DNA from: Rhodosorus marinus CCMP1338
Lineage: Eukaryota; Plantae; Rhodophyta
Assembly: GCA_029953675.1 (NCBI GenBank)
Contig: JAMWBK010000012.1
Coordinates: 682,001-746,000, forward strand
DNA: 64,000 nt
Reading direction: 5' to 3'
Shown here piece after piece: positions 277 through 21,385 of the stretch. The notes below the pieces were generated by a model, which saw nothing but the letters and a program-made list of their open reading frames with translations, made no database searches and was not told the origin of the DNA. A program made the translations under genes and the position numbers. Positions within the stretch are counted from its first letter, which is position 1. Every line of letters begins with the position of its first letter.

Positions 277-3200
277 ATCGAACGAATGGTTTAATCGGAG
301 GCTGAAAAAAAAAACCCGAGGGGAAAAAAAGACTAAGCGCGGCGAAGTACTCGCGCCTCCAACATCAAAGCGGCATTCATGCGCCACAGCAGGAAACTTA
401 AGCGGGTAAACCACGATTGAAGACGGTCAGGGCGTTCGCGGAACAACTCCCGAAGCCAGCGAGAACCAACAGAGTCCATGAACCCAAAGCACTCAATGAT
501 CAGGGGTACCAAGCGATGTGCTAGTGCCGAAGCACGAACACCAGGGGAAGACAAAGCCCCCGCGTATTTGATCTCTTTGCGGCGTCTCATGCTGGCGGCG
601 GCAGATCCACGGCGCTCCCCCGCAGCCGGGAGATAACGACTAGCTTGAGGGTTAGGAACAGCAAGATCAACGTATGTGGTACGGCGGCTGTCGTCACAGG
701 TGATCACCAGGTCGGCTACACGGCGTTCATCATTTTGAAAGTCCGCGACGGGTAAAGGTTTCTCACTTTCGATTTCCAGACCGGCTTGCCGGACTATAGG
801 CCGAAGTTCCCGGTATAACAGGTTCAAGATCCGTGTGTGGCGGCGGGTTCGAGCACCTTTCACCGCCGGGCAACTAGCGAGCAGGTGGGCGCCAAAATCT
901 GCGTTGTCTTCAGTCTGAGAGCAGAGAGGGCACGACGAACCCATCTCGTACGGCCAAGGGGGCTGATGTAAGCCGAGGTATAAGCGCAGTGAAGTACGCA
1001 CTTCGAAATCCGACAATGTGAGTGGCGGAAAGGCTGGTACGGTCATGAGCCACTGAGAGCTAATAACCCCTCCAAGACTACGTAGGCGGGCGCGAGCGCG
1101 AGAAGATGAGACCATCTGCGCGAGGAGTCGGCCATATGCAGCACGGTGCAAGTCCCAAGAAAGGATATTTTGCAGCGCATCCGTGCGTGCTTGAGCTCGG
1201 CTCCCAGCGCGCTGGGAATCATCGTGAGGATCAACTGGAACTTCTTCTTCTGCGGCAACCACTAGGTCAATCTCCCCTAGAACAGGTTCAGGCGCAGGAC
1301 GAATCCCGGGGCGGAGCCTCGAGAGCGGTCAAATACAGCTCGCCAGTCAGGAAGACGGGGTTGAACGGTTTCGGGGAGACTAGTACAGGAATTCAGGGCG
1401 GTTTGGAGCTCCAGAAACAAGTCTTGGGCGCTTTCCGGTACGCTGGGAAGCAAGACACCCCGCGAGAGGCTCGCCATCAAATTGCGGAACTTCGAGATAC
1501 CCAAGCTGCTCAAAGTGGGAAGTGCGGTTCCCCAGGCCCCTACTGCGGCTGCAGGTTGGACCACAACACGATTGCAGAGGCCCAGTCCCCCCAATCTCAA
1601 TGGGAGGCCTACCTGGGCGCGCACAACATCACAGGTGGGTCGCGGCAGAGCGCTCAGCTCTTCATCGAGAAAATACCCAAGGTCACGGAAGATTTCAGCA
1701 TCCGCACGAGTGGCCAACCACCGGCCCCAATGAGTTGGAAGTGAGCGGAGCCAATAGGTTAACCGCTGACTGCAACAATACCGAAACAGCAACAACGAGC
1801 ACTGGAGAAAGCCCGGAGGGAGCCGTCGAAGCTCTGCAACCAGCTGTCTGTGCTTACCGAGGATCTGCAGCAACTCGCCTTCAACGAAGGACGGCGACCC
1901 GTAGGGGATGCCTAAGTGGACAAAACCATCCGGTCTCCAAATATCCTGGAACGACGCAGGTACTTGCTGCTCTTGTGCAGCTACACCTCCCCAGTAGAAC
2001 GATTTGTGATGATTAACCTCCAAGTCAACCCGCGAAGCCAAGGAGCGGAGACGATCATAAGCGAGCGCTAGAGTATCAGGGGGCCCCAGGAGGCACACGT
2101 CGTCGTGGTATGCAACCGTACGAACCTGCGGGAATTCGGAGCGAAGACAAAGCAAGACGAGTTGTAGTCCACAGGCATGTAGGAAAGGGGACAAGGGATC
2201 ACCCTGTTGTACCCCTGTGCGCGCCGCAAACGTGTGTGAGGAAGCGCCAAGGGTGTCATAGGTAGCCCCACGACCAAGCGGAGAATGAAGTCTACTAACA
2301 AAGGGAAAGCCTACAGGGAAGACTTCGCGCACCACGTGCATGAGAGCCGGACGAGAGACGCGGTTGAACGCATTGGTAAAATCTACAGAGAGGAGCCCAG
2401 AATCTGGGGAGTACGCCATTTCCGAACGGAGCAAAACAGACAAAAACTCACAGCCACCACGATAGCCCACGCCTAACTGCACGTGCCCAAAGAAACGGCG
2501 GGATTCGGGAACCAGGATTTTCACTAACCATCGCGCCGCCAATTTGCGGACCACCTCAACCAGGCCAATAGGGCGAATAGCAGGGCTCGAGGCCGTGTGG
2601 CCGGGCTTCGAAAGCAGACACGACTGCGAACGCCCGACCAAGAACCACGCACACTCACACAGGGGATCACCATTCACAAGCGCTTCGACCACCCACGCAA
2701 ACGCCTTCAAACCTTCATCACTTAAGAAACGGAGATATTCCACCCGCAGCCCGAGGGCCCTGGGGAACGGCCCTTCGGAGCATCATGAACCAACTCACGC
2801 ACCGCCTCCAGATTGACCACTAACCGTGCACTGGGATGTGGCGCGGCGCGGTACTCTTCCAACACTGATTCAAACGCCACTCACACTGTCGGATTTCGAA
2901 GTGCGTACTTCACTGCGCTTATACCTCGGCTTACATCAGCCCCCTTGGCCGTACGAGATGGGTTCGTCGTGCCCTCTCTGCTCTCAGACTGAAGACAACG
3001 CAGATTTTGGCGCCCACCTGCTCGCTAGTTGCCCGGCGGTGAAAGGTGCTCGAACCCGCCGCCACACACGGATCTTGAACCTGTTATACCGGGAACTTCG
3101 GCCTATAGTCCGGCAAGCCGGTCTGGAAATCGAACGTGAGAAACCTTTACCCGTCGCGGACTTTCAAAATGATGAACGCCGTGTAGCCGACCTGGTGATC

Positions 3201-4182
3201 ACCTGTGACGACAGCCGCCGTACCACATACGTTGATCTTGCTGTTCCTAACCCTCAAGCTAGTCGTTATCTCCCGGCTGCGGGGGAGCGCCGTGGATCTG
3301 CCGCCGCCAGCATGAGACGCCGCAAAGAGATCAAATACGCGGGGGCTTTGTCTTCCCCTGGTGTTCGTGCTTCGGCACTAGCACATCGCTTGGTACCCCT
3401 GATCATTGAGTGCTTTGGGTTCATGGACTCTGTTGGTTCTCGCTGGCTTCGGGAGTTGTTCCGCGAACGCCCTGACCGTCTTCAATCGTGGTTTACCCGC
3501 TTAAGTTTCCTGCTGTGGCGCATGAATGCCGCTTTGATGTTGGAGGCGCGAGTACTTCGCCGCGCTTAGTCTTTTTTTCCCCTCGGGGTTTTTTTTTCAG
3601 CCTCCGATTAAACCATTCGTTCGATTCAAACGAGGAGTCCCAAGGGGAGCCTTCCGAGGGAAAGAGCAAACGGAGCGGTGAAGAAAGATCATCGGAGTAT
3701 GGAACCACAGGCTGCCGCTGCTGGAGGATCCCGGCTGCCCGCCGCAGATCACCGCCTGCCACCGCGTGACGCGCCCGATTCTGTCGAGAAGACCTAAAAG
3801 CTGAGGGAGCACTAGGAGAAAAGGAAGAGAGAGAAGCGAAATAAAGACGTTCGAGGTCCGCAAAGTCGCCGGAAAGGAACATTTGCAGTTTTCGGCGAGG
3901 GTGGACCCGGCGAGGATGTGGGTTGAGGGGGACGGTAGAGGAGGTGAGCACGAGGCGGGGAATAAAGAACAAGAGTTCCCAGCGAAGAGAGCAGTGAGGG
4001 TTCGCGGCGACCTGCTGCCAGAGAAAATCCAACACCAATCCTAGGGGCTTATGAAGTCGACGAGGGAGCCGTACGGCGGTGCTCTGACGACAAAGGGGAA
4101 GGGAACCGTCCGGGTAGGAGGCGACAAGGTGCGAAAACCACGAGAGAACACGCTCATGCCAGGCTGAGCGGTCACATAAGGA
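277..4182 (-). mobile_element. CRE-clade (CRE/Cnl1/MoTeR-like) non-LTR retrotransposon with RT, CCHC-type zinc finger and restriction-like endonuclease; interrupted by a nested insertion and two frameshifts
   Basis: N-terminal part 4182-3633 (LPRRLHKPLGLVLDFL...LLFFIPRLVL...RARHAVAGGDLRRAAGIL...LLFP). RT 2866-1277 (RSPGPSG/LRVEYL, IRPIGLVEVVRKLAAR, QLGVG, VDFTNAFN, GVQQGDPLSP, YHDD). C-terminal 1262-333 with CPLC...HLLASC and ADLVI...YVDLAV...KEIKY. A -1 G frameshift at ~2750 and a second frameshift at ~1280-1330. Confidence 0.9.
2867..3632 (+). mobile_element. 5'-truncated antisense copy (~750 bp) of the same CRE element, flanked by a 10-bp target-site duplication GATTCAAACG
   Basis: 2875-3625 is the reverse complement of 277-1027, with only three differences spotted by eye. 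GATTCAAACG occurs at 2867-2876 and 3623-3632. Removing 756 bp restores the host frame: ...WDSSFES|VLEEYRAAPHPSARLVVNLEAVRELVHDAPKGRSPGPSG. Confidence 0.92.
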
Positions 4183-4573
4183 TCAGGGGAACAATATCCT
4201 TTTTTGGAAAGTATTCGCAATTTCCAAGTCCTGCAATAACTTTTATTTTTCGTTTTGAAGGCAAGAGTACTATATTTGCTTAGGCAGACTAAGGTTGTAG
4301 CCACTTCTGTTCCACGCACACCTTGCGGATGAAAGAACCGGAGCAGCAAGCAGTTTGGAATGAAATAAATGAGGCCAGCTGCTCTGGCTCCTTAGACTGG
4401 ACTTTACTGGACTTTACTAGCATAGCCTGAAGCGCTACGCAAGGCGTGAAGATGAACTAATAACTAGGGAGGGAAGTATGCAACCCCAGGCGCCGATGGC
4501 GCGCCTCGGAAAGCATGTCGCTGACTTTACTAGCATAGCTCCTTAGACAGCTCGCATAGATTATTTTGAAAGG

Positions 4574-7045
4574 TTAGTTCTGTTTGACTTTGACATTATC
4601 GAACCAGCACGTGCTCTTATTATCTGCAGACGAGAGGCGGACTTCGACCGTTCCACGGGCATTTTTGAAAGACGCAGTTTTCTGATTCCATCCTGTTTTG
4701 TTCGAACTTTTCCTTCCGAGGAGCTTCCCGTTTTGCTTGAGCACAAGCTCGCAGTTGTCACTGGCGCGCTTTTTCTTAATATAAGCGGACACACTAACGT
4801 TCTTATTTGTGCTTACATTGAACGCCTGCTTTATCGTTCCGCCTGCGCTGACCTTTACAGAGCGCTTGCCTTTATAGCTCCTGCTGTTGTCGAGCTGTAC
4901 ATTCCCGCTCTTCGTCCATCCAGATAGGTTATTCGAAAAATCTCCATTCTTGAAGTTTCCAGATGACGGAGGTGCTACACCACCACCGTTGCCGCCATTA
5001 CCGGAGTTGCCAGAATCACCACCGCTGTTCCCATCGCCAGGTTCCACTGTTCCACCACCGCCGGACAGCTGCTCCGTGATTATCGTAACCGAACTAATCT
5101 TTGCATTGAACTTGTTGCACTTGCTGCAACTACACGTCACCGCGACTTCTGAGCTCTGTTTCAGGGAACTCAAGGACGCGTAGTATTCGAACATCATCCA
5201 CCGGGATTCGCTATTGTTTTCAGGTCCGAAAGAATTGGCTGGTCTCGAAAGGTTCACACCGTTCAGTTTTGCATCACATTTCACGTTCAGAACATCACTG
5301 TAGCCGCCCAGTGCCACTCGGACCTTCACGGTTCCTTTGCCGGTTGGCAAATTCTTGAAAGAGAACTTTTGCGTATTCGCGGTCGACTTCCCATAAGCCT
5401 GGCTTATCGGCACTACCTCACGGCCGCTGAAATGCCTTGTGACCTTTGAACTTCTCCTCGCCTTGGGTGAAACCCGCAGGGGAATCTTTATAATGACAAA
5501 CTCGTTCGGGCTCAAGGACAAGTTCCCAGCAAGCTTGACAAGAGCGGACGAGCTGCTAATTTTTTGTTTGGTAAGAGCCGGGACTCCAGACCAAGGCAAT
5601 TTGTGGCTCTTGGCACAACTCTGGGTGGACGAAGAACTCTTGAGTAGCAACCTCCGCAGTTCAGCTCCCTCCGAACTCAGAGTTGGGATTCCGTCGACGA
5701 ACTTCAGATTGGCAGTCTGCTTATTCTTTGAAAAATTCTTCAGCATCACCCAGAACGTGTTGCCGTCTTTCATTAGATGTGCCTGCACTTTCGTGCTCTG
5801 GGTGGATGCGCTGTAGTATTGACCTTTCACTCCTTCCAGAATCTCGTAGAGCTTTATGAGATGAGTCCACACTGTCTTTCCGTTTACCTTTCTCTGCAAG
5901 CTCCACGGCAAAGGATTTCCCTTGGAGTCATAGGTCCCTTCAAGAGCGAAAGGTACCGCTTTCAAAATCAAATCTGGGTGAGCCGAAAACTGCGATATCA
6001 TGGCGGTGATCGTGTTGAGAATAGCCCAATCTCGAGTTGCACAATATGGTCTTGCGGTTTTTGCAGCCGCGCCCTTTGTTCCGCTTGCTGACACGAACCA
6101 CACGTCGTTAGATCCCGCGGCGAACTCACTGACGATGATGGGCATCGGCTTTCCAAGCTGGTTTTTTGTATGAGCCCATACCAGGTCCATCATCCCCTCA
6201 ATATGCCCTCCTCGCATAAGCACTTCACCCGCACCCTGCTTGTAAGAATCGTACGTGTGGAAGGAGTAGAATTTCATGGATTTTCCAGCTTCCTTGGTAA
6301 ACGGTACCAGTCTGTTCTCATACGGCAAGAAGTCTTGTCTAACGAAATCGGACCAACCGGATGCCCAACCACCACACAAAGGCTGGCAGCTTCCGCTTTT
6401 CAGCTTGGAAGTCACAACGTCACAAACGGCCTTGTGGAATTTCCCGATTTTGGCGAACGCTGCTTTTCGCTGTTCGTTTGAAGCCTTGCTATTGGTTTTC
6501 CTCGGATCTACGTACACCATCCCCTCGTTGACGGGTTCCAGGTACTTTGGGCAGTTGATATTCTGCTCCTTGTCCTGCAGCATTGGGAGAAAGTTTGCCA
6601 CATATTCACCGTATTTCGCATTCGAGATATTGTTGTCTTTGATATAGTCGAGTAGCTCAAAACCATCGGTCATCACTATGTCTTCGGACCCTCCGAATTT
6701 CTTGCACTCGTTGGACCTCGAGCATATCTTGGTGTATGTGTTCGCTCTTTTTTTCAGCTCTGCATTATTGGGATTCTTTATGGCATCAGGTGCTCCTCTT
6801 CTAAAGGGTCCCCTCCCAGTTCTTCCTTCCGTCGCGCCGAGGTCGCCCATCAAGTACGATACACTTGAAGGGGACATCGACTGCCCTTGCACCGTGAAAT
6901 GCCCGGAAGCGAATTTGTCTCGCGTCCACTGGGTCTCACCCCCGATGGATCTCGGGCAATACAGATCAAGCTCGACTTGAACTGCCCATACTGAGATCAG
7001 CAAACTCACGAAGACAGCAACCGCCGACCCCTTCATCGCTCGCAT
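4574..7045 (-). CDS. Secreted GH86 beta-porphyranase/agarase-like glycoside hydrolase with Gly-rich linker and C-terminal carbohydrate-binding (galactose-binding-like) module, 823 aa, intronless
   Basis: Signal peptide MRAMKGSAVAVFVSLLISVWA. Clan GH-A motifs typical of BpGH86A-like enzymes: YLEPVNE (acid/base), FYSFHTYD, GGHIEGMMDLV, PIIVSEF (nucleophile), LILKAVPF, WTHLIKLYEILEGVKG. GGGG...GNSGG linker, then FKNGDFSNNLSGW...CWFDNVKV CBM-like domain. Confidence 0.8.
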   Translation of the reverse strand: MRAMKGSAVAVFVSLLISVWAVQVELDLYCPRSIGGETQWTRDKFASGHFTVQGQSMSPSSVSYLMGDLGATEGRTGRGPFRRGAPDAIKNPNNAELKKRANTYTKICSRSNECKKFGGSEDIVMTDGFELLDYIKDNNISNAKYGEYVANFLPMLQDKEQNINCPKYLEPVNEGMVYVDPRKTNSKASNEQRKAAFAKIGKFHKAVCDVVTSKLKSGSCQPLCGGWASGWSDFVRQDFLPYENRLVPFTKEAGKSMKFYSFHTYDSYKQGAGEVLMRGGHIEGMMDLVWAHTKNQLGKPMPIIVSEFAAGSNDVWFVSASGTKGAAAKTARPYCATRDWAILNTITAMISQFSAHPDLILKAVPFALEGTYDSKGNPLPWSLQRKVNGKTVWTHLIKLYEILEGVKGQYYSASTQSTKVQAHLMKDGNTFWVMLKNFSKNKQTANLKFVDGIPTLSSEGAELRRLLLKSSSSTQSCAKSHKLPWSGVPALTKQKISSSSALVKLAGNLSLSPNEFVIIKIPLRVSPKARRSSKVTRHFSGREVVPISQAYGKSTANTQKFSFKNLPTGKGTVKVRVALGGYSDVLNVKCDAKLNGVNLSRPANSFGPENNSESRWMMFEYYASLSSLKQSSEVAVTCSCSKCNKFNAKISSVTIITEQLSGGGGTVEPGDGNSGGDSGNSGNGGNGGGVAPPSSGNFKNGDFSNNLSGWTKSGNVQLDNSRSYKGKRSVKVSAGGTIKQAFNVSTNKNVSVSAYIKKKRASDNCELVLKQNGKLLGRKSSNKTGWNQKTASFKNARGTVEVRLSSADNKSTCWFDNVKVKQN

Positions 7046-10000
7046 GCGAGTTTCTCTTCACAACGAGGCCACAAAACGTGACTTTCCTACAGATTCACCA
7101 CTACTATATCGGTCCTCTACACACAATCCTTGGTACCACAGGTTTCACCAACCCTCTTATTGCTACCAAACTGCGAATTCACCTACACCAGTTCCCACCA
7201 AAAGAATATACTTGCTGATCTTAGAAGCAAGTCAGAGTCGATCAGAGAGCGATTCCTCTCCTTAAATAGGCAAGCACCGGATCACCAGAACGCATGCGCA
7301 CGTGATTTCTAGGTTTTCGGGATACTCACTCATAGTCGAGGCAGAAGGTTTCGCCCCTGGTCGCTACGTTCGGACTCCATTGAGAATTTAACTGGAATAA
7401 GCGGAAAAACAAGGGAAATACATTTCGACATGTCCGGTTCCCACGCCCGCACACAGTCCGTACTCGTTCAGCAGCTGAAACTCATTTCCGAATGTCTGAC
7501 CCGTTGACGAGAAAAGCAGCTTAAGCTCACTAGCCTTCCATCAGTTCGCCCTGACGATCTAACCACTAGACTCAACTCTGGCGAAAAGTGATTGTAGTAC
7601 TTTTCGCCTGAACCGACCCATGCTTCCCCCAAAAACAATGAAAGGAGAAAACACAAAGGCGCCGAAAAAGAAGAAAATACCGTTCGTTTCTATTCTGAGC
7701 AGAGCGCACCACAGATCGACTCGATCAATGGCAACCCGCTTCCAACTGCCACTGCCGCGATCGATTTGAATACTTGAAAAACCCTAGACTTTTACCCCTA
7801 TGCTTTGTAAAGCAAAAATTCCACTTTTCAAGAAATGCCGTTGGAACTCTCGCTGAGTTCATGTCAGTTAAAATAAATCAAATCAAATCGAGGTCTTCGG
7901 CCGTGGATTATGGACATTTTCTTCTATTTTATATGTTAATCTCAACCAATGGACATGTCCTTGAATTATGTTGTGGCAGAACGATGAATTTACTGGGTTT
8001 CGGGAGGGGGCCCCGGGAGGGGTTCGGGAGGGGGTGGGGGTACCAACTTGTTTTCCCATATTGTTTTGTGTTTTACCAACAGCATCAGGGAGGAAGACGG
8101 ACGGACGGGTCATGCGTTCGGGACGGTTCGTTGGCAAGCGAATATTTGAACGGACGATACACTTGGCGATGGAGGTTGAGCGTATGAATCGGGACGAAGG
8201 GAGAAGATTAAATTGTTCGTTAGTGCTTATGGGGGTGCGGGAGGGGGGCTCTGAAGAGTGTGAATTGCCTCCTTAGGGTTCCTAAGCTCTCTGTTCAGGT
8301 ACACTTTCGACGTCAACATCGACACATCGAACTAGGTTGTCGCCCTCTGGGAAATTTTATGAACGGTTCTGTAAACTGCGATAGAATTGGAAATCACGAT
8401 TCCGTGTCGCGATCGCTTTAGGGTTCCAATCCATTTCCACCAAAACGAGACTTCGTTTTAATGCCGCTCTTGTTTATTCTCCACCCTTTCTAAATCTATT
8501 GAATCGTGATGTGTTCGTAGGCCCTTCCGCTCTCCCCCCCCCCCGGCAACGTTTTCGCGAGCTGCAGCAGAACAGGTCTTCAAGGACCTGGACAAAAACA
8601 AAGATTTGCATGGCCCAGTTTATGGACACCCACCGGAGTATTTATTTCGCCACAGCACAACATCTGACCTACCCGCGAAGCATTCCGCTTTAGCCAAGTC
8701 TGATGTTTCCAAAAAACAAAAAAAGCCTACCCGAAAGAGAGAGAGGGGGGGGGGAAGGGATCATCATCACCTTATGCTCTTTAGTCACAAAAACCCACCT
8801 GCTCAGGATCTCTTTATGCCCTAGACAACACAGGCACCGGCCAGCCCTCCCCACCTCCCCCCAGCCACCTCCTTCAAAAATGATCCTCTTCAAAATCAAG
8901 TCATCTTTTCCCAAACGCGTTGTTTTGGGGTCCTAAACCAAAACAACTAGTCAGTAAAGAAAAGGAACTGAGCGATCCGAGCTTTCCATTGGACGACTGA
9001 AACGAAAAAACTTGAATTCAAAACTCCATCCATGTTCACCCAAAAAGCTTTTAAAATATTTTCAATTCAATAAGTTGGGATCGCTTTATTGGAAACTGTC
9101 ACGGCGACAACTAAATTTGTATCGACAATGATTGGCTGTAGAACTTAGTATGACGTAGTAATTTCGATATCGTCATGAATTTTGATTGAATCTGATCGTG
9201 CGATCGAAAAGGCTGGCTGGTCGCTGCTTAGAAAATCGTCCCATCGAGACTGTGGGAGGGAATGCTACACGAGGTAAGCGTCTCATTTGGCCATGGCCGT
9301 GAGAGTCCCTCTCTCAACCCAGTTTGAATACTAGAAGGTGGAAATGATCCCCTCCCCCTTCCACTGCGAGAAGTTTTTTTGGGGCTCCTCGGATGGTTTC
9401 AAGCCTGTTTATGATTGAAGTGAACGTGTCCAACTGAATGTGTTTAGGTGTGAGGCGGAGCAAAAAGAACGTGTGGGGGCGGGGGGAGGAGGCTACTGAA
9501 TAGAGAGAGATAATGCGCCTGGAAAAAAAAAGTAGCGTTCATACGCCACAATCGGAAACTCGAACGGGTAAACACGAGCCGTTGTTCACCACCGCCTCCT
9601 CCCCCGCCGGAGAGAGGAATTCTCGGAACACAACTGAAAATGGTTATCCAAACTGATGTAGCATTGAAATGAACGTGTCCAAACGAATCTGCTCACACAC
9701 GGACGGGCGGGCGTGTGAGCAGCGATTGCGTTCAGCTTGAAAGAATAAAAAAAAGAAAGACTTGGAAAATGCTTTCTCGGTGGATAACAACCACCATTTG
9801 CAGATCGTGTTATGGATGAATGGGATGATAACTGCAAGTGAATGTCAAGGCTCGAAATCGAAATATCTCTTTTTGCAGTTTTTCAACCTTTTCAGCGGGA
9901 CATATGAATCACACAAAAAAAGGCAAACCCAGTTGAAAGCTCCTATCGCCTGCGGGAACGGAAGACTCAGTCCACACCAAAGCGAGGAGCCTTTCCTACC

Positions 10001-12999
10001 GCTCTCCTTAACTTCCCCTCCCACATACAAGAACAAGCAATCGAGTAAAACCTTCAGTTGAATACGCTTCGACCCACACTGTCAAGCATGTGAACAACCA
10101 GAGTTCAATACCCAGCACGAATATCCGTAAACTTCATCAACCACCCATTCCTGAGCACAAACACATGGAACTGAGACTAATCCGGATAGCCGTCCGAGCT
10201 GAAGATGTTCTGCCCATAGTTTTTTCGGGGGAAAGTTGCGGTTGACCCTCCACTTACGTTTTCCTATTTTTCTTTCACACTCGCTCCTTTGCATGAACAG
10301 ACACTAAACACAATCGTATGCCACAAAGCGCCTTTTTTGTCGCGACTCCGTTCAAAAGGAAATAAACCTGACTTCAAAATGACCTGAAAGCTGGAGACTC
10401 TGCGGAAGCGCCGATTGCATAGAACGGGAAGGTTTTTTTCCAATCAAACCTAATCAAACAATGCAACGAACTTTTTCCTGACCGCATATCATCTTGGAAG
10501 CTGGTAGCCTGGAGACCATCAAGAACACGTAAGTGGCAGAGTCACAGAGCTAGATGACTACGGCAAGGGAATCTCGTCATCTTGTCCAGGGCGGTATTTA
10601 TTCCTGTATTTATGCGCGATGCACTTTTTGAACTTGCCGCCGTGAGTCCTAGAGCTTTCTCAACGATCTTTCGAGCAATTTTTAGGACGGAGGAGGGTCG
10701 TACGACCATCAGGAGCAAGTATCAAACCGCTAGCATCAGGCCTTTTTCTCGGATTGATCTATTTACTGGTGGTCCATCTGCTCCGCTCCAAACCACCTAT
10801 GCGCAAAACAATTTTCTTAGGAACGACATCTTGCCCACTTTTACGCCAATTCGATTTCAGAGAACGACCCTACAAAAGGAACCTGACGTCGTCGGAGCCC
10901 TTGGAACGTCAGACCGTGTCTTGGTACCGTTCTCCGTTTCTACTGAAGCGACTGTACGTGGTATAGAGAAGTTGCGACTATAGCAGTAAAACAAATTCTG
11001 GGAACGAGGCCTACATATTTTTCGGCTTTCTTCAGCGTTCCTGGACCCACCCTGGTCGCCTTGTTTTTGTCACGATGCTCATAACTAGCTCTACATTCAC
11101 GGATGCGACGACCTAAAAGCTGGATAGTTTTTCGCGATACACGCCCATTGGAAGGCCATACAACCTTCGTAACTATTTTTGATCCCTTCCAAGGATATGA
11201 ATTCAACAGCTCTGGTAACTTGTAAAGCTTAACTAATCCCTGATGGGAATTTGAACTCGACCAATAGTTTTCAACTGCATAACTCGCGGGATGGACGCCG
11301 ATTGTTATCCCCGCATTCTTGACCGGAAGGGTTTCTTACTATCATTGATTGATGATTCAATAAACGCCAGGGAAGCTGCAAACAAAAATGGTAGTGCGTA
11401 GAAAGGCATAGGTATATACCTACGCCTGATCCCAATCTTGGAATAAAATGAAGAACAAACTCCGCAATAAAAAAAAAAAAAACGCTTTATGCTCTAACTA
11501 AACCCGTAGTCCCGGCGAGGTTGAGCAGTTCGGGCAGTCATTGATCTCGTCTGAGTTGACATCGCCATCCTCTTCACAGAGCTGACGTCCGGACATGTCC
11601 TAGTTCAGAACAGCACCACGGATCTACCTGCGTTTGTTTCAGGCCACTTCGCAATCTAATCGTCCCGCCTTTTTGTCAAGCGCGTGAGAATCGGATCGCA
11701 ACGGTTGTGGCTACTGTTTCTTGCCTTGCGTGTGCGCTCCTCCGAGGCCTAAGGACGAGATGCCACAAACGTATGAAATATTTCATGAGGGAGTGTTGGA
11801 CCTTAATAGTCTCCACTGTTGAATTCGAATCGGAGCCTCCATCGATCGGCTTCGACAGAAGGGACTTGTAGACCTGGGACTCGCAACCCGAAGATCTGCC
11901 GCGTGTGGCAGTTCCTCGATCGGCATGATAGCCGAGGCTAGCTGCTGTCGCCTTAGCTTGCACGCTCTAGTTCCTCGTAGCTAGTTCACGTTACTCTTTC
12001 TGTAGCGCCCGTCCTTCCGTTTTCAAGGTTGTGAGAGCTGGATCGACTTTTTCAGCAACCATCTTCTGGGCTCATGTGAGCTCAATTCATTTTGAAAGGC
12101 TTACGGATGAGACTTCATACGCGTATGAACGAGATCCTGAACGAAGAATTGACCCGAGTTGGCTACAGTGTCGCATCGAATCGGAACTGCATCGATCGGT
12201 CTCGGCTGAGGAGGCACCTCGCTGCATCACAGATCTCCTGTCTTGGATGCTCTAGCCAGACTTTCGGAAAACTGTGAAACTACCAGTCCCTTTTCCTGTG
12301 CCAAGTCCCATCCGCTGCCCAACTCCCGGGTGGACTGCCGCTAGGAAGGAAAGGTCTAAAGGGTTCTAGCCTTTCATTGTGTAAATTTTTTGGCTGCCTC
12401 GGCATGTATTTTTGGAATGTGGTCACAAATGTTCTACTGACCATCCCGCACGGGTCCTAGTACTTTGTACTCAAACGCCGTTTCAATTTCGCCTTGTCAC
12501 GATGCTTGTGCTGGATCGTGGCCAAGGCTCGCCCCATCTCGTGTTGAACGTTTTAGGTCTGGGGTACCTAGATCGCACTACGCCCTGAGTAGGGCCTAAG
12601 CCTACGTGTGTAAAACTACCGCCTCCCCGAATGCTTGCACATTCTAAGTTCAGTATTTTACCCGCGAGCTTGTCAATATTTTAAAGTGGGAATTCGACTG
12701 TTGTAAAAGCGGTGATTTGATCCGACCTCTATATCAGACCAAAGCTGCAAGAAATACTAGGAGCTTAAACGGAATCCTAAGGCAAGATCTCATTGAGCTA
12801 CGCCGTTCCATAATCGCCGGAGAAAGAGGGTTCGGCAAGAACAATGCCGTTCTCGTGAAAGTCCTTCTCGCCAACCATGCTATGCGATTCGATGGCGAGC
12901 TCACACCAATGCGCAATAGACACAATCCACTCATGAACTTTCACCGTTCCTAGAAATATTATCCCTTTTTGTTTTCTACTTCCCACTATCACAGCCGGG

Positions 13000-13960
13000 T
13001 GAGCATCTTATACTCTTCGCCGATAGAAGGAACGATCGTACGCCGAGAGCATGGCCAGCCTCCCCTTCAGTGAGTTCGAGCCGCAAAGGTTTCAGCCTTT
13101 GATTGTGGAAAGTTCTGGTCACCTTGAAAATACAAGCTTTGGAGTGGCTTCGCGAAGGTTTTACCGACCATCCTGCCGAGTATCTTGTACTTCTACGCCG
13201 GTTCAGTGTCGTATGGCGATATTCTAGCAGGGTACTAGCTGAGTCTCGCTACCGCCGCCTTGGCTTGCAGGCTTCTGCTGCTCGTAAAGAATCCGCTTGG
13301 GCGCAGGATCTGGTTCTGGCGTGCGAATTCATGTTGGACGCGCGTCATCAGTGTCTCCCTTTACGCTCCTCATGGCAGATAGGCTCTGAACAAGCGCAGA
13401 TAGTGATGCTGCCGGTCTGGAATGTACCTGAATATCGGAAAATTGCTGAGTTCCCCAATTCCGGGACTGCGAACGTAGACATCGACAAGACTGTAGCAAC
13501 GACAGCACAAGGCGATCGATCTGTACTGAGCTAGCCAGGCGACGCAGCCGACGACGATTTCCTGAATAAAACAGGACATCACGCTCACTTCGAGACCCAC
13601 GACCTTAGCCCAGACCTGGTGGCCATCTACCCCAGGACCTGGCAACATTCCCTGAGTCATTCTGAATGATGGGACCGGATGAATGCGATGACCGATAAGA
13701 GCCTCCGCACGCAGAGGCGATGGCTCATCCAACCTTTCGGGATTCGGCGCTGTCTCAGCGGTTTGTACCGCTCGTGCTTTCGTCGTTTATACAGTGATGC
13801 TTCTCGCCGGCTTCGTCCTGACTTTCGCAGTGCCCGTGGGACATCTTGACAGCCTCCTCACGGACTGTCTTTGACACCCTTCCGCTCCACCGCTGCTCTG
13901 TTGGTGGACGGGCGTCATCAGCGTCTCCCTTCGTTAAGCTCCTACAGCGCTAGCTCGCTT
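13000..13960 (+). mobile_element. Possible degenerate DIRS-like retroelement remnant (RNase H/methyltransferase-like region)
   Basis: Broken motifs LFADRRNDRTP and SRY...W...QIGSEQAQIVMLPVW resemble the DIRS MT-like domain. An imperfect ~36-bp repeat lies at 13335-13371 and 13905-13944. Many stops. Confidence 0.3.
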
Positions 13961-14397
13961 CAGATAGATGACCGGGTATCTCTGACGGCTTTCATTTCAC
14001 CATGATCATTCGCTCGCAGCTATAAGAGAAGACCTAACACCCCTACGAGCCAAGAAGTCTTAAGTCCATCCGGTCAGTCTATCTAGTAGGGGACAAGACT
14101 ACGGGCGAAAGTAGAAGAGAATACTGAGGGATTTTCGATACGACATTAAGAATAGTGATGTCCTCAAAAAGCGAACCGCTGTGCCAGCCGTCGCTCCAAG
14201 ACCCCCATGACAATCAAAACCCTCATTTTGGATCGGAATCAATGATTTTCTGTTGGGATGATGACGTCGATTGAAAGCTTTTTTCCGGGGAAGAAGACGG
14301 TGCGTGGGGGGGAAGATCGATTCTCATCTTTTCTGAATCTTCGATAAGGATTTCTAGGGCCTTCTTTGTTCCTTTTGTTGAGAATTTGAGAAATAAA

Positions 14398-15292
14398 ATG
14401 GAGAGCTTGGGAGAGTATTGGAAGAGATTTAAGACTTCCTCGAACCAGTCGGTGCGTTTTAAGGATTTGACTTGGACCCAGCTGAGGATGTTTTGTTTAC
14501 GATTTTTTGACCGGATTTGAACCAATTCTTTCCGTTCGTGATTGGATTCTACAGGTTGTTCTGCAGGTAGTCAACCTTGGTCTGCTTCTCTCCGGAGCTC
14601 TTGTGGCGTACAAGATCCTGAGCTTTATCACGCAGGCTGAGAGCCCTATTGTGGTCGTCTTAAGGTGTGTGGGAGTAGACCCTCCTTTTTGCCCGGGTTT
14701 TTGCAGGATTTGATGTGACTCTGAAAACTTGATAATCGTGCCATCATCGACCGCAACAGTGAAAGCATGGAACCGACTATACGAAGAGGTGATCTTCTCT
14801 TCTTATCAAACTACAAAGAGCCCTATACCACCGGAGATATCGTGGTATACCTCATACCAGGAAGAGAAGTACCGATTGTGCATCGGGTTGTAAAGGTTTG
14901 CTCGCAACGTGCTCACCAAAGACCTGAAAACCCCCTGTTCAGGCCTGTCATCTGACATCCATCTTCTCCCACAGGTCCACGACAACGAGACGGATTCAGA
15001 CCCTCAAATCTTAACCAAAGGGGACAACAACTTCGCAGATGATATCCAACTTTACGAAGGTAGACGTTGGCTAACTCGAGATCTGATCATTGGAAAGGCG
15101 TATCTTATTGTCCCTTATGCGGGAATGGTGCGTTAAAGAACCAACTCTAGCCGCGCTCCGCTTTATCCCCAAGAATCTAACCGTTGACCCGTTCTGCTTC
15201 ACCCTTAGTTGACCATATGGTTGAACGACTACCCACCCTTGAAGTTCGCGCTACTCGGATCGATGTCTCTGTTCGCTTTGTTAACAGACTAG
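14398..15292 (+). CDS. SEC11: Signal peptidase complex catalytic subunit SEC11 (5 exons)
   Basis: Spliced product [18 protein letters not shown]|VVLQVVNLG...ESPIVVVLS|[15 protein letters not shown]...IPIVHRVVK-type motif|...LTKGDNN...PYAGM|[13 protein letters not shown] introns at 14452-14554, 14665-14759, 14896-14974, 15128-15208. Confidence 0.95.
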
Positions 15293-19657: not shown

Positions 19658-21385
19658 ATGAGTAAGGCGGGAAGCAGGGATCCGTTCAGAATGAGGAAGA
19701 GTCCAGGGAGCTGGTTGACGCACAGGATTGTGATTTTTAGTGGTGTGGTGACAGTTTTGTTTGGGTTCTACGGGCTGACGTCGTTGAGGCAGGATTTGGA
19801 ATCGAGTTCGCTTGGTCAGGATGAGCAGTTTTTGGGCAAAAAATTGGTCGAAGTTCCGGAGGTTCCAGGTTCTGGACAGGGACCTACTGTATCAGCTGGT
19901 AGTGCAAGTGAGGAAGAGCTGATGGAGTCTCTGATGGACAAATACGCAATCAGTACTGAAGGTGGGCAAAAGCAGCCTGGGGCAGGTCCTCCGCTGCAGC
20001 CGCCTCAACAGGCACCTGTACCGCCGCCACCAGCGGTACCTCTATCAGCACCGGATACCCAGGTCCCTGCACCACCAGCCGTGCCCGTACCAACAGCGGA
20101 TGGACAGGTCCCTGCGCCACCAGCGCAGCAGCAAGTCCCACAGCCGCCAGCACAAGGCGATCCCGCAAACCCGTACTTCCGCTCCGTTGAAGTACCACCA
20201 GCGGGTGCGGCTGGTGGTCAACCTCCGCCACCACCTGCGGTACCAGCTGCTGTTGAACAGAATCCGCCCTCAGATCCGAATCCGCTCTCAGATCTAGACC
20301 TGTACATTCCAGAGGGCCCCAACGAGATGTTCGGAAAGACCATCTCCTTCAGCCCAATGGAGAAGTGGGACGCCATTCCGATCAACGTTGCGGATTACGA
20401 CCTGAGCAAACTGTCACAACAGCTGCCGGAGTGTGCGACCACTGTCTCACCGCCCAAGACGTTCATTTTTATCATGTCTTCTCATACTGGAAGTGCGTAT
20501 TCTCTCGGAGTCAGCGGATGCCAAGGTCATGTGAACTAAGAGCCGTGCTTTTGTGTAGGTACCGCAATGATGTCCCAGCTATTGCGACACCCAGATCTTC
20601 ACTGGCTTCACGGGGGTGGTACGATGGAACTCTTGAATCGGCCGGGCATTCTTGGCGACGATGAAGCCGAGGTAAGGTTCACAAGAGGGTTTATGTCCGA
20701 CTGCGTGAAAGTGGGTAAGGTCGGTGGGTTCAAAATGAATCCGACTCCGATCAAGCGCAACCCGGAACCATGGAAGCAGATTGCGGCCGACTTTGAGACT
20801 GGAGTCATCTGGAACTATCGAGAGAACATGTTAAAGAGGAGTGTTGGTCGATTCCCTCCATGTTTTCTCGACGATGACGTTTCTGTTGCCGGGGTCCAAG
20901 CAGGAATGAGCCGGGAGGAGCGATGTAAGCAAGGAGTCGGGTGCACGTTCAAGGTCGACGCGGAGAAGCTGCACTCTTTGATGGTGCGCTCGAAGATTCT
21001 CTATGATGATATGCATCAGGCGGTTAAGGAATTAACGGTGAATGCTGGTCGTCCGGCGTGCGTTCTGAATGTCCCGTACGAGGATTACCTCTACCACCCC
21101 ACGGAAACGATCCTTCAGATGGAAAAGTTCCTTGGGCTCAAGCCCTACATCACGGAGACGTGGAGGGCCAAAGCCACCAGCGACAACATGTGCGAGGTCG
21201 TAGAGAACTTTGCGGAGGTGTGCGCCGCATTCAGAGAGTGCAGCCTGTGGGGACAAATGTTAGAGGACCCGAAGAACAACTGCAGCTGCTCGAACTACCA
21301 GTACGAGTCTTTGGGGGGCGACGGTGTAAACCCGCTTTGCAAGGGATACTACCTACCAAATGCAGAGTACACCTGTCCGTACTAG
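19658..21385 (+). CDS. Type II membrane sulfotransferase-fold protein, paralog 1 (Stf0/P-loop sulfotransferase-like), ~553 aa, aperiodic Pro/Ala/Gln stem
   Basis: Short basic N-tail and TM (IVIFSGVVTVLFGFYGL). Intron 20493-20558 joins FIFIMSSHTGS|TAMMSQLLRHP. Further motifs GFKM, IWNYRENMLKRSVGR, YEDYL..P.E....[20 protein letters not shown]. Spliced length 1662 nt, in frame. Confidence 0.8.

What the first reader, a model, noticed from the sequence alone, without database searches (positions are those of the whole stretch)
4574..7045. Intronless bacterial-type GH86 porphyranase-like gene in a eukaryotic chromosome
Seen in sequence: an 823-aa uninterrupted ORF in a genome where most neighbours have introns, with signal peptide, intact EPVNE and SEF catalytic motifs and an appended CBM. 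It ends ~400 bp from a retrotransposon, in the same contiguous sequence as spliced genes. Established knowledge: characterised GH86 porphyranases/agarases come from marine and gut bacteria that degrade red-algal galactans. Inference: a horizontally acquired (or retro-processed) enzyme used by the alga to remodel its own wall or mucilage. Its GC content looks host-like, suggesting an old acquisition.
Basis: partly seen in the sequence, partly recalled or inferred. Interest (0 to 1): 0.75.

Follow-up and report, generated by a model that had tools for sequence, protein, structure and literature searches.

The report
Red alga's own bacterial-type galactanase gene
A unicellular red alga (Rhodosorus marinus) carries in its own chromosome an intact, expressed, intron-free gene for a secreted GH86 enzyme of the kind bacteria use to digest red-algal wall sugars; it is one of a whole family of such genes that early red algae apparently took from bacteria long ago, probably to remodel their own slime coat.

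Summary
Window 4574-7045 (-) is an uninterrupted 823-aa ORF. It has a signal peptide, EPVNE (170-174), SEF (306-308) and a C-terminal CBM.

It is a true GH86. PDB sequence hits reach E=2e-19, and an AlphaFold model (pLDDT 89) matches BuGH86, Aga86A and BpGH86A at TM 0.82-0.84. E174 and E307 align with the catalytic acid/base and nucleophile.

The window is Rhodosorus marinus CCMP1338, on a 1.16-Mb nuclear contig from a long-read assembly. Contamination is effectively excluded:
- the flanks hold a retroelement and spliced eukaryotic genes;
- GC and codon usage match the host;
- a second strain's transcriptome holds a colinear orthologue with a conserved 3'UTR;
- dN/dS is 0.18.

The gene is not a singleton. 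R. marinus has at least five GH86 genes on three contigs. The four complete ones are all intronless.

These genes, a Bangiopsis sequence and four from one unidentified sample form a clade with 99% NJ bootstrap among bacterial sequences. The clade also shares an invariant Cys208 that none of 117 bacterial representatives has.

The best reading is one ancient bacterium-to-alga transfer, followed by duplication, yielding secreted endo-beta-galactanases. Action on the alga's own sulfated-galactan mucilage is inferred, not shown.

Verdict: new (eukaryotic) member of a known enzyme family; moderately interesting.

The parts
4574..7045 (-). Complete intronless CDS (823 aa plus stop) of a secreted modular GH86 glycoside hydrolase of Rhodosorus marinus (protein P0001)
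   Evidence: ORF list. GH86 hits in the PDB: 5TA1 E=2e-19, 8H97 2e-17, 4AW7 7e-10. Foldseek TM 0.82-0.84 to the three solved GH86 structures. Called as one gene with span = 3 x (aa+1) on JAMWBK010000012.1.
6983..7045 (-). Signal peptide (aa 1-21, MRAMKGSAVAVFVSLLISVWA)
   Evidence: Hydrophobicity profile. Low-confidence N-terminal helix ahead of the folded domain, which begins at residue 22. All 13 algal homologues have comparable hydrophobic N-termini. No SignalP was run.
5831..6982 (-). (beta/alpha)8 catalytic barrel, about aa 22-405. Contains the acid/base E174 (codon 6524-6526, motif EPVNE) and the nucleophile E307 (codon 6125-6127, motif SEF)
   Evidence: E307 aligns with E322 of BuGH86. 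The 5TA0 E322Q mutant shows Q at that column. EPVNE aligns with the EPLNEP motif of BpGH86A. E170, N173, E174, H263, Y265, D287 and E307 are 98-100% conserved in 13 algal and 117 bacterial sequences, and S306 in 100% and 88%. Codons verified.
5060..5830 (-). Two beta-sandwich (Ig-like) accessory domains typical of GH86, about aa 406-662
   Evidence: All-beta secondary structure at pLDDT mostly above 90. The Foldseek alignments span about 690 columns of BuGH86, Aga86A and BpGH86A. Pfam hits are weak and below threshold: Porphyrn_cat_1 (420-473) and BPA_C (561-641).
4955..5059 (-). Disordered Gly/Ser/Asn-rich linker (aa 663-697)
   Evidence: pLDDT below 50 for residues 664-695. Sequence GGGTVEPGDGNSGGDSGNSGNGGNGGGVAPPSSGN. 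Length varies between paralogues.
4577..4954 (-). C-terminal carbohydrate-binding module (aa 698-823), of the CBM_4_9 / CBM16-like beta-sandwich type
   Evidence: Pfam CBM_4_9 at 32.2 bits, above the 25.9-bit gathering score. The best structural match for this domain is 8XMZ, 'novel porphyran-binding CBM' (TMt 0.82, rmsd 1.8 A, 24% identity). Sequence E=0.0011 to the same chain.
4190..4573 (-). 3' untranslated region, conserved with the transcript of strain CCMP769. It is interrupted by a roughly 150-nt dispersed-repeat insertion at 4395-4543
   Evidence: Transcript L003 aligns colinearly with window 6415->4544, then 4394->4190, skipping 4395-4543. The repeat at 4396-4523 recurs several times (six BLAST matches) just beyond the window start.
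277..3625 (.). Flanking retroelement: an RT ORF at 1277-2743 (-) between 751-nt inverted arms (277-1027 and 2875-3625). It is context for the gene, not part of it
   Evidence: Pfam RVT_1 E=6.7e-11. Inverted repeat at 100% or 99.6%. A further copy of the arm lies downstream of the window.

Best explanation
The ORF is a functional nuclear gene of the unicellular red alga Rhodosorus marinus (class Stylonematophyceae). It encodes a secreted, modular, retaining endo-beta-galactanase of glycoside hydrolase family GH86.

Domain order: signal peptide, (beta/alpha)8 barrel with acid/base E174 and nucleophile E307, two beta-sandwich domains, a flexible Gly/Ser/Asn linker, and a C-terminal CBM whose nearest solved relative binds porphyran.

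It belongs to a red-algal GH86 multigene family, with at least five genes on three contigs of this genome. More appear in a second strain's transcriptome, in Bangiopsis, and in one unidentified sample.

The family descends from a single ancient transfer of a bacterial GH86 gene, and the nearest named bacteria are marine Bacteroidota. After the transfer the gene duplicated into at least two well-supported subfamilies. It stayed intronless, took on host GC content and codon usage, and acquired eukaryotic UTRs and signal peptides.

Shown: gene integrity, GH86 membership by sequence, fold and catalytic residues, chromosomal location, transcription in a sister strain, purifying selection, and algal monophyly (by NJ only).

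Inferred: the enzyme is exported and cleaves beta-1,4 galactosidic bonds in the alga's own agar- or porphyran-like sulfated galactan of the wall or mucilage. That would loosen or turn over the sheath during growth and division. The CBM would tether it to the polymer.
For: GH86 identity:
- phmmer against the PDB gives 5TA1 at 2e-19, 8H97 at 2e-17 and 4AW7 at 7e-10, and the profile search agrees.
- The AF2 model has pLDDT 89.4 and pTM 0.80.
- Foldseek's top seven hits are all GH86, with E from 1e-47 to 7e-41 and TMt 0.82-0.84. The next families, GH30 and GH39, come only at about 1e-15.
- The nucleophile E322 of BuGH86 (PMC5849685) aligns with E307. Eight active-site positions including E174 and E307 are 98-100% conserved in 130 sequences.

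Eukaryotic residence:
- The window is JAMWBK010000012.1, a 1,155,867-bp contig of the ONT assembly of R. marinus CCMP1338.
- It is flanked by a retroelement and by intron-bearing S26 peptidase and DHHC genes.
- ORF GC is 49.9% against 49.6% for the window.
- GC3 is 0.585 against 0.63 for host genes, with RSCU r=0.67. Bacterial homologues have GC3 of 0.18-0.36 and r of 0 or below.

Expression and constraint:
- The MMETSP0011 (strain CCMP769) transcript L003 is colinear with the ORF and its 3'UTR.
- dN/dS is 0.18, and 0.16 for the paralogue pair.

Gene family:
- P0003 (contig 1), P0009 plus a 1266-aa gene, and P0128 (contig 6) all lie among eukaryotic genes such as Vps35, GT47, XPG, Cpn10 and cyclin.
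- The four complete copies are all intronless. By contrast 11 of 14 complete neighbouring genes have introns.

Monophyly:
- The 13-sequence algal clade has 98.5-99% NJ bootstrap, and 97% on the slowest 60% of columns.
- Cys208 is present in 13 of 13 algal and 0 of 117 bacterial sequences.
- Every named clade member is Rhodosorus or Bangiopsis.

Substrate plausibility:
- Bound polysaccharides of Stylonematophyceae are galactose-rich: 78% galactose in Bangiopsis and 87% in Rhodaphanes.
- A sulfated galactan 'close to red seaweeds' was reported from the Chroodactylon sheath (PMC9031348).
- The CBM is nearest to a porphyran-binding CBM.
- GH86 paralogues sit beside sulfotransferase and GT47 genes.
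- There is a precedent in red-algal GH16 beta-porphyranase, attributed to bacterial HGT plus duplication (PMC9771727).
Against: - No enzymatic or localisation data exist, and the polysaccharide of R. marinus itself was not found in the literature searched.
- Specificity-determining residues of the -2 subsite (F77 and S326 of BpGH86A) could not be mapped at 16-20% identity.
- The phylogeny is distance-based NJ on saturated distances (about 1.7-2.1). The bacterial sister group is unresolved, with support below 35%, and the tree is unrooted.
- Only 150 of 362 hits were visible and only about 30 were named. Absence from other eukaryotes is therefore not demonstrated.
- Four clade members come from an unidentified SRA run.
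- Pfam's GH86 accessory-domain models hit this particular protein only below threshold.
- Expression was shown for the orthologue in another strain, not for this allele.
Confidence: 0.75

Rival explanations
1. Same enzyme and origin, but a different biological role. The secreted GH86s attack foreign red-algal galactans: the walls of macroalgal hosts or substrata, competitors, or dissolved agar/porphyran. The purpose would be attachment, niche competition, defence or carbon scavenging, not remodelling of the alga's own matrix.
For: The only characterised red-algal galactanase of bacterial ancestry, Chondrus CcGH16-3, degrades porphyran. That polymer is not known in its own matrix, and its authors propose defence or niche competition (PMC9771727). 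Many Stylonematophyceae are filamentous forms with mucilaginous sheaths, and that many grow as epiphytes on seaweeds is my own background knowledge. A secreted enzyme carrying a CBM, in a family of at least three divergent groups, resembles the diversified repertoires of bacterial degraders.
Against: R. marinus is a free-living unicell, and Stylonematophyceae make galactose-rich bound polysaccharides themselves. Paralogues lie next to biosynthetic-type genes, a sulfotransferase and a GT47. No downstream catabolic genes such as GH117, GH2 or sulfatases were seen near any copy, though only 20-kb neighbourhoods were inspected.
Confidence: 0.2
2. Vertical inheritance: GH86 was present in an early eukaryotic or archaeplastid ancestor and survives only in Stylonematophyceae. 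Alternatively the transfer ran from alga to bacteria.
For: The tree is unrooted and the bacterial sister group is unresolved. The family is old and diversified within the algae, with paralogues down to 20-25% identity.
Against: Among the hits that could be named, the only eukaryotes are Rhodosorus and Bangiopsis. The other named hits span Bacteroidota, Verrucomicrobiota and Planctomycetota. All checked algal copies lack introns in a genome averaging about 3 introns per gene. The algal sequences form one tight clade among 117 diverse bacterial representatives.
Confidence: 0.04
3. Artefact: a bacterial contaminant read or contig chimerically joined into the algal assembly.
For: The gene is intronless and its relatives outside this clade are all bacterial. 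The neighbouring retroelement has suspiciously perfect 751-nt inverted arms, which could hint at local long-read assembly problems.
Against: GC and codon usage match the host, unlike the bacterial homologues. The gene lies within 1.16 Mb of eukaryotic sequence. An independent strain's transcriptome has the orthologue at 86.5% nucleotide identity, including a conserved 3'UTR. Four further paralogues are embedded among eukaryotic genes on two other Mb-scale contigs. No bacterial sequence is closer than about 25% identity.
Confidence: 0.01
4. A retro-processed (retroposed) copy of an intron-bearing host gene, which would explain the lack of introns and the adjacent retrotransposon.
For: The gene is intronless, lies within 0.5-1 kb of a reverse-transcriptase-bearing element, and has a dispersed repeat in its 3'UTR.
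Against: All four complete paralogues on three contigs are intronless. The transcript of paralogue P0003's orthologue is colinear with the genome through both UTRs. No intron-containing parent was found. No poly(A) tract or target-site duplication is evident at the 3' end. The paralogues are far too diverged (dS 2.4) for a recent retroposition.
Confidence: 0.02

Closest known systems
BuGH86 (Bacteroides uniformis NP1 beta-agarase; PDB 5TA0/5TA1/5TA5) and Aga86A_Wa (PDB 8H97)
   Same: Best sequence hits (E=2e-19 and 2e-17) and best fold hits (TMt 0.82-0.83 over about 690 columns). Same (beta/alpha)8 barrel plus two Ig-like domains. The nucleophile (E322 in BuGH86) and the NE(P) acid/base motif are conserved.
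   Different: Only 18-20% identity over the structural alignment. The algal protein is encoded in a eukaryotic nucleus. It has a eukaryotic-type signal peptide, a Gly/Ser/Asn linker and a C-terminal CBM. It also carries the algal-clade-specific residues Cys208 and Asp127. Its substrate is unknown.
BpGH86A (Bacteroides plebeius beta-porphyranase; PDB 4AW7)
   Same: GH86 fold (TMt 0.84). The EPLNEP and SEF catalytic motifs align with EPVNEG and SEF. Weak matches to the Pfam domains defined on this protein, Porphyrn_cat_1 and BPA_C.
   Different: 16% identity. The L-galactose-6-sulfate pocket residues (F77, S326) could not be aligned, so porphyranase specificity is not established.
Red-algal GH16 galactanases, e.g. 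Chondrus crispus CcGH16-3 beta-porphyranase (Manat et al. 2022, PMC9771727)
   Same: Same evolutionary scenario and the same kind of substrate. A bacterial marine-galactan hydrolase was transferred to a red-algal ancestor, then duplicated, and is encoded and expressed by the alga itself.
   Different: An unrelated fold and family: the GH16 beta-jelly-roll against the GH86 clan GH-A barrel. The GH16 genes were described in Florideophyceae and Bangiophyceae, not Stylonematophyceae. That paper does not mention GH86. The GH86 acquisition is therefore an independent, parallel event.
Porphyran-binding CBM, PDB 8XMZ (probably the CBM16 of Mei et al. 2024, Int J Biol Macromol 265:131041)
   Same: Nearest solved structure to the C-terminal module (TMt 0.82, rmsd 1.8 A, 24% identity; sequence E=0.0011). 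The shared N-terminal motif is NGDF..NLSGWT.
   Different: The sequence match is marginal. Pfam files the algal module under the broad CBM_4_9 family. Ligand-binding residues were not compared and binding was not tested. The link between the PDB entry and the paper rests on matching titles only.

Membership tests
GH86 (CAZy glycoside hydrolase family 86; beta-agarase / beta-porphyranase) | Significant sequence similarity of the catalytic module to characterised GH86 enzymes | tested here: met
   phmmer against the PDB: 5TA1 2.3e-19, 8H97 1.6e-17, 4AW7 7e-10, with no other family below E=0.04. Profile search: 9e-19, 2e-18 and 7e-10. 198 homologues at E<=1e-10 among 1.84 billion representatives.
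GH86 (CAZy glycoside hydrolase family 86; beta-agarase / beta-porphyranase) | Clan GH-A (beta/alpha)8 barrel followed by two Ig-like beta-sandwich domains | tested here: met
   AF2 model with pLDDT 89.4. The seven best Foldseek hits are the three solved GH86 proteins, TMt 0.82-0.84 over 671-691 columns, 30 orders of magnitude ahead of GH30 and GH39.
GH86 (CAZy glycoside hydrolase family 86; beta-agarase / beta-porphyranase) | Two catalytic glutamates: the acid/base in the N-E-P-type motif at the end of strand 4, and the nucleophile (E322 in BuGH86) at the end of strand 7 | tested here: met
   E174 (EPVNE) aligns to EPLNEP of BpGH86A. E307 (SEF) aligns to the E/Q322 column of 5TA1/5TA0. Both are 100% conserved in 130 family members.
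GH86 (CAZy glycoside hydrolase family 86; beta-agarase / beta-porphyranase) | Curated-model assignment (dbCAN/CAZy HMM, or Pfam Porphyrn_cat_1 / BPA_C accessory domains) | tested here: inconclusive
   No dbCAN library was available. Pfam Porphyrn_cat_1 scores 18.9 bits (cut-off 27) and BPA_C 16.9 bits (cut-off 26.2), so both are below threshold for this protein. Paralogues P0009 and P0128 and the 1266-aa gene carry unmarked BPA_C hits.
GH86 (CAZy glycoside hydrolase family 86; beta-agarase / beta-porphyranase) | Endo-hydrolysis of beta-1,4 linkages in agarose or porphyran | not testable with these tools
   This needs recombinant enzyme assays. The -2 subsite determinants could not be mapped by sequence.
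CBM_4_9 / CBM16-like carbohydrate-binding module | Beta-sandwich module matching the family model | tested here: met
   Pfam PF02018 at 32.2 bits, above the 25.9-bit cut-off, for aa 698-802. Structural match to 8XMZ at TMt 0.82. Ligand specificity was not tested.
Horizontally transferred gene (bacterium to eukaryote), fixed and functional | Physically integrated in a eukaryotic chromosome, next to bona fide eukaryotic genes | tested here: met
   1.16-Mb ONT contig. Retroelement and intron-bearing genes in the flanks. The same holds for the paralogues. Raw reads were not inspected.
Horizontally transferred gene (bacterium to eukaryote), fixed and functional | The recipient-lineage sequences form a clade whose relatives are otherwise all from the donor domain, and the family is absent from other eukaryotes | tested here: inconclusive
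   Algal clade at 99% NJ bootstrap, with Cys208 as a shared derived residue. Every other named hit is bacterial. However, most of the 362 hits are unnamed or unseen, only NJ was possible, the tree is unrooted, and the donor clade is unresolved.
Horizontally transferred gene (bacterium to eukaryote), fixed and functional | Transcribed and under purifying selection in the recipient | tested here: met
   Orthologous MMETSP0011 transcripts for two paralogues. dN/dS is 0.18 and 0.16. The catalytic residues are invariant in all 13 algal sequences.

The most novel reading that the evidence does not exclude
Stylonematophyceae, an early-branching class of mesophilic red algae, independently domesticated a bacterial GH86 agarase/porphyranase. 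They expanded it into several ancient subfamilies that serve as the endogenous machinery for cutting and remodelling an agar-like sulfated-galactan sheath. To my knowledge these would be the first eukaryote-encoded GH86 enzymes. They would be a second recruitment of a bacterial galactanase for wall remodelling in red algae, convergent with GH16 in Florideophyceae and Bangiophyceae. That would imply that agaran-type matrix polysaccharides and their enzymatic turnover are older and more widespread in Rhodophyta than the seaweed lineages.
Probability: 0.4. Interest if true: 0.7.

Novelty: new member of a known kind. Interest (0 to 1): 0.55.

Why it matters
GH86 is treated in the literature searched here as a bacterial family used to eat red-algal walls. 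No open paper combining GH86 with Rhodosorus, or GH86 with Rhodophyta, describes an alga-encoded member.

Showing that red algae encode, express and have diversified GH86 enzymes would matter in four ways.
1. It gives a handle on how red algae loosen and recycle their own sulfated galactans. For that process almost no enzymes are known besides the GH16s of Chondrus.
2. It provides a clean, datable example of bacterium-to-alga transfer followed by subfunctionalisation.
3. It offers new, possibly differently specific galactanases and a CBM for making defined oligosaccharides from agars, porphyrans and microalgal exopolysaccharides.
4. It warns metagenomic studies that GH86 reads in marine samples need not be bacterial.

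Tried and rejected
1. Word-indexed homologue searches with algal profiles returned almost nothing. They did not even return the query's own alignment members. Low-complexity linkers or first-sequence words probably dominated the candidate list.
The single-protein scan found no viral relative, so there is no support for virus-mediated transfer.
3. I could not identify the organism behind SRA runs SRR22824282 and SRR22824290, which supply four clade members. The one paper matching the accession prefix is unrelated.
4. I looked for a CAZyme census of red algae that mentions GH86. The Porphyra genome paper, under the PMC id I recalled for it, is not held, and the Bostrychia preprint does not mention GH86 or GH16.
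5. NCBIfam gave no meaningful hit.
6. Rfam and tRNA scans of the window were empty.
7. I did not attempt to map the porphyran versus agarose determinants (F77 and S326 of BpGH86A). HMMER alignments to 4AW7 do not cover those residues.
8. Contaminant, retroposed-copy and vertical-inheritance readings were considered and rejected, for the reasons given under the rival explanations.
9. Foldseek and phmmer hits of the CBM to C-terminal domains of Bacillus pesticidal crystal proteins reflect the generic CBM-like beta-sandwich fold. TM-scores are 0.1-0.14 overall. I did not pursue them.


Full report
1. THE OBSERVATION

Window 4574..7045 on the minus strand is a single ATG-to-stop ORF of 823 codons.

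- EPVNE is at residues 170-174 and SEF at 306-308.
- The N-terminus is hydrophobic (MRAMK-GSAVAVFVSLLISVWA), with a Kyte-Doolittle maximum of 2.9. It precedes the first structured residue, 22.
- A C-terminal module scores above Pfam's gathering threshold for CBM_4_9: aa 698-802, 32.2 bits against 25.9.

Downstream lies a reverse-transcriptase ORF at 1277-2743 (-), with RVT_1 at E=6.7e-11. It sits between 751-nt inverted arms at 277-1027 and 2875-3625. The nearest provable edge of that element is about 950 bp from the stop codon, and an unassigned ORF ends about 540 bp away.

ORF GC is 49.9% against 49.6% for the window.

2. WHERE THE WINDOW COMES FROM

The exact protein is encoded on NCBI assembly GCA_029953675.1, contig JAMWBK010000012.1 (1,155,867 bp). 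Window position x corresponds to record position x + 682,000.

This is the Oxford Nanopore-based nuclear assembly of Rhodosorus marinus CCMP1338, a unicellular red alga of the class Stylonematophyceae. The assembly has 13 contigs above 1 Mb, 31.2 Mb in total, 8,392 genes and 24,821 introns (Lee et al. 2023, PMC10250338). That paper does not discuss this gene.

Upstream in the same contig are an S26 peptidase gene (window 14398-15292, 895 bp for 178 aa, so spliced) and a DHHC gene.

3. WHAT THE PROTEIN IS

Sequence. The only significant PDB matches are the three solved GH86 enzymes:
- the beta-agarase BuGH86 (5TA1, E=2.3e-19);
- the beta-agarase Aga86A_Wa (8H97, 1.6e-17);
- the beta-porphyranase BpGH86A (4AW7, 7e-10).

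Catalytic residues. In the alignments, E307 falls on the column that is E in 5TA1 and Q in 5TA0, the E322Q nucleophile mutant (PMC5849685). EPVNEG aligns with EPLNEP of BpGH86A, which makes E174 the acid/base.

Structure. An AlphaFold2 model built on a 60-sequence alignment is confident, with mean pLDDT 89.4 and pTM 0.80. Only residues 1-4 and the 664-695 linker are disordered. Foldseek ranks the GH86 structures first, with E from 1e-47 to 7e-41 and TM 0.82-0.84 normalised to the target, over about 690 columns. The next families, GH30 and GH39, appear only at about 1e-15.

Architecture:
- signal peptide, residues 1-21;
- (beta/alpha)8 barrel, about 22-405;
- two beta-sandwich domains, about 406-662;
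- Gly/Ser/Asn linker, 663-697;
- CBM, 698-823.

The CBM's closest solved relative is 8XMZ, 'a novel porphyran-binding carbohydrate binding module'. The fold match is TMt 0.82, rmsd 1.8 A and 24% identity. The sequence match is E=0.0011. By title, this is probably the CBM16 of Mei et al. 2024.

No bacterial export tag was detected: Pfam reports no T9SS sorting domain in this protein, whereas some bacterial homologues do carry one.

4. IT IS A GENE FAMILY, NOT A SINGLETON

An exhaustive HMMER search of 1.84 billion cluster representatives, using a profile of the four closest sequences, found 362 homologues at E<=1e-3.

Look-ups showed further members in the same R. marinus genome.
- P0003: 839 aa, 60% identical, on contig 1 (3.8 Mb), next to a Sulfotransfer_1 gene.
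- P0009: 872 aa, on contig 6 (2.47 Mb). It lies about 6.7 kb from a further 1266-aa GH86 gene and about 0.8 kb from a GT47 gene.
- P0128: 838 aa, also on contig 6, among XPG, Cpn10, HAD and cyclin genes.

All four complete copies have a gene span equal to 3 x (aa+1), so they are intronless. By contrast, 11 of the 14 complete neighbouring genes in those loci have spans longer than their coding length.

The transcriptome of a different strain (MMETSP0011, CCMP769) contains orthologues of at least two of these genes, P0002 and P0004. Both are contigs of JGI 3300017118. It also contains several other family members: P0025 and its cluster mates, P0069 and P0160.

Bangiopsis sp. CCMP1999, another stylonematophycean, has P0007.

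Four further members (P0006, P0008, P0018, P0039) all come from one SRA run, SRR22824290. I could not identify its organism.

5. NOT A CONTAMINANT, AND EXPRESSED UNDER CONSTRAINT

Transcript L003 from CCMP769 aligns colinearly with window 6415->4544 at 86.5% nucleotide identity. It continues into the 3'UTR (4394->4190) and skips only a roughly 150-nt repeat insertion at 4395-4543. Transcript L004 is colinear with the genomic paralogue through both UTRs.

dN/dS between strains is 0.18 for this gene and 0.16 for the paralogue. Between the two paralogues dS is saturated at 2.4.

Codon usage tracks host genes: GC3 is 0.585 against 0.63, with RSCU r=0.67. The Bacteroidota homologues have GC3 of 0.18-0.36 and zero or negative correlation.

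No bacterial protein is more than about 25% identical.

6. PHYLOGENY

I aligned 130 near-full-length catalytic modules to an HMM (490 columns) and built NJ trees with Kimura-corrected distances.

The 13 red-algal or presumed algal sequences form one clade. Support is 98.5% (200 replicates), 99% (300 replicates), and 97% when only the slowest 60% of columns are used.

Within the clade:
- subfamily A holds this gene, P0003, P0004 and P0006 (96%);
- subfamily B holds P0025, P0128, P0069, P0103 and P0039 (100%);
- P0007, P0008, P0009 and P0018 are unresolved.

A character-based check agrees with the tree. Cys208 is present in 13 of 13 algal sequences and 0 of 117 bacterial ones, which have Ala or Gly there. 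Asp127 is 13 of 13 against 13%.

The unidentified SRA sample has members in subfamilies A and B and in the unresolved set. On this NJ tree, the duplications therefore appear to predate its split from Rhodosorus.

The bacterial sister group is unresolved, with support below 35%. Most of the nearest named bacteria are marine or gut Bacteroidota: Saccharicrinis, Marinoscillum, Sediminitomix, Marinifilum, Aquimarina and Rikenellaceae. Lentimonas (Verrucomicrobiota) and Aporhodopirellula (Planctomycetota) also appear.

Caveats: the method is NJ only, distances are saturated, the tree is unrooted, and most hits are unnamed.

7. HOW IT MOST LIKELY WORKS

Shown: this is an intact GH86 with the full catalytic constellation. 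R75, E170, N173, E174, H263, Y265, D287 and E307 are 98-100% conserved across 130 sequences, and S306 in 100% of the algal and 88% of the bacterial ones. A secretion signal and a CBM are also present.

From established knowledge of clan GH-A and GH86: the mechanism is retaining double displacement. E307 attacks C1 of a beta-D-galactose at subsite -1, and E174 protonates the leaving O4 of the alpha-L-galactose-type residue at +1.

Inferred: the substrate is the alga's own galactan.
- Bound polysaccharides of Stylonematophyceae are galactose-rich: 58-87% galactose in Chroothece, Bangiopsis and Rhodaphanes.
[quoted passage not shown] 2014).
- The porphyran-binding-like CBM, the sulfotransferase and GT47 neighbours of paralogues, and a tandem triplet of sulfotransferase-like ORFs 13-25 kb away in this window are consistent with this. 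None of them is proof.

The main rival for the role is action on foreign red-algal polymers, as proposed for the Chondrus GH16 beta-porphyranase (PMC9771727).

8. COMPARISON WITH WHAT IS KNOWN, AND NOVELTY

Membership in GH86 is met on sequence, fold and catalytic residues. It is untested on activity, and inconclusive on curated-model assignment. There was no dbCAN library, and the Pfam accessory-domain hits are below threshold for this copy.

The evolutionary scenario closely parallels the red-algal GH16 story of bacterial transfer followed by duplication. It involves an unrelated family and a different algal class.

In the paper library available, no article combines GH86 with Rhodosorus. 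None of the 18 papers combining GH86 with Rhodophyta concerns, by its title and abstract (16 were listed), an alga-encoded GH86. UniProt's automatic names ('Beta-porphyranase A C-terminal domain-containing protein') show that database pipelines have already seen the similarity.

I therefore rate it a new (eukaryotic, algal) member of a known enzyme family. It is well supported, of moderate interest, and worth biochemical follow-up.

9. VERDICT

- Observation: confirmed.
- Interest: 0.55.

Noticed in passing
window 277-3625: A retroelement with an unusual structure. A reverse-transcriptase ORF (1277-2743, minus strand) is flanked by two 751-nt arms that are perfect inverted copies (277-1027 and 2875-3625). 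The arms themselves carry ORFs (333-1262 minus; 2826-3569 plus). Another 1-kb copy of the arm lies 2-3 kb beyond the window start (L002 18930-19956). It could be a DIRS-like element with inverted terminal repeats, or a long-read palindrome artefact.
   Followed up: partly
window 4395-4543 (3'UTR of the GH86 gene); L002 17098-21101: A roughly 110-150-nt dispersed repeat is inserted in the 3'UTR of the CCMP1338 allele. It is absent from the CCMP769 transcript. It recurs several times (six BLAST matches) within the 4 kb just outside the window start, so it is MITE-like or a short satellite.
   Followed up: partly
window 20567-21385, 26639-27451, 31695-32687 (all + strand): A tandem triplet of paralogous ORFs, 43-45% identical to each other. 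Each has weak, sub-threshold Pfam hits to Sulfotransfer_1 or Sulfotransfer_3. Each is preceded by a GC-rich, low-complexity ORF (19658-20539, 25385-26638, 30264-31484). The profile finds no PDB match. They are possibly carbohydrate sulfotransferases, 13-25 kb from the GH86 gene.
   Followed up: partly
L001 13920-14946; L005 1-3322 and 13382-15392: Other GH86 paralogues sit beside polysaccharide-related genes. P0003 is 1.4 kb from a Sulfotransfer_1 gene. P0009 is 0.8 kb from a GT47 (exostosin) gene and about 6.7 kb from a second, 1266-aa GH86 gene. This may be a loose clustering of matrix-polysaccharide genes, or it may be coincidence.
   Followed up: no
L006, L007, L008, L017, L018 (Logan assemblies of SRR22824282 and SRR22824290): Four divergent GH86 genes from a single unidentified sequencing run fall into each part of the algal clade. 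All are uninterrupted ORFs on contigs of 48-50% GC. The organism is presumably another stylonematophycean or related red alga, but it could not be named with the tools available.
   Followed up: partly
window 7046-14397: A 7.3-kb stretch upstream of the GH86 gene has no called gene and only three ORFs of 110 aa or more. That is unusually gene-poor for a 31-Mb genome with 8,392 genes.
   Followed up: no
window 25069-27460 and 30264-31542: Long overlapping ORFs lie on both strands, and GC peaks locally at 62.5% (30001-32000). This is the signature of GC-rich low-complexity coding or repeat sequence, not of several real genes.
   Followed up: no
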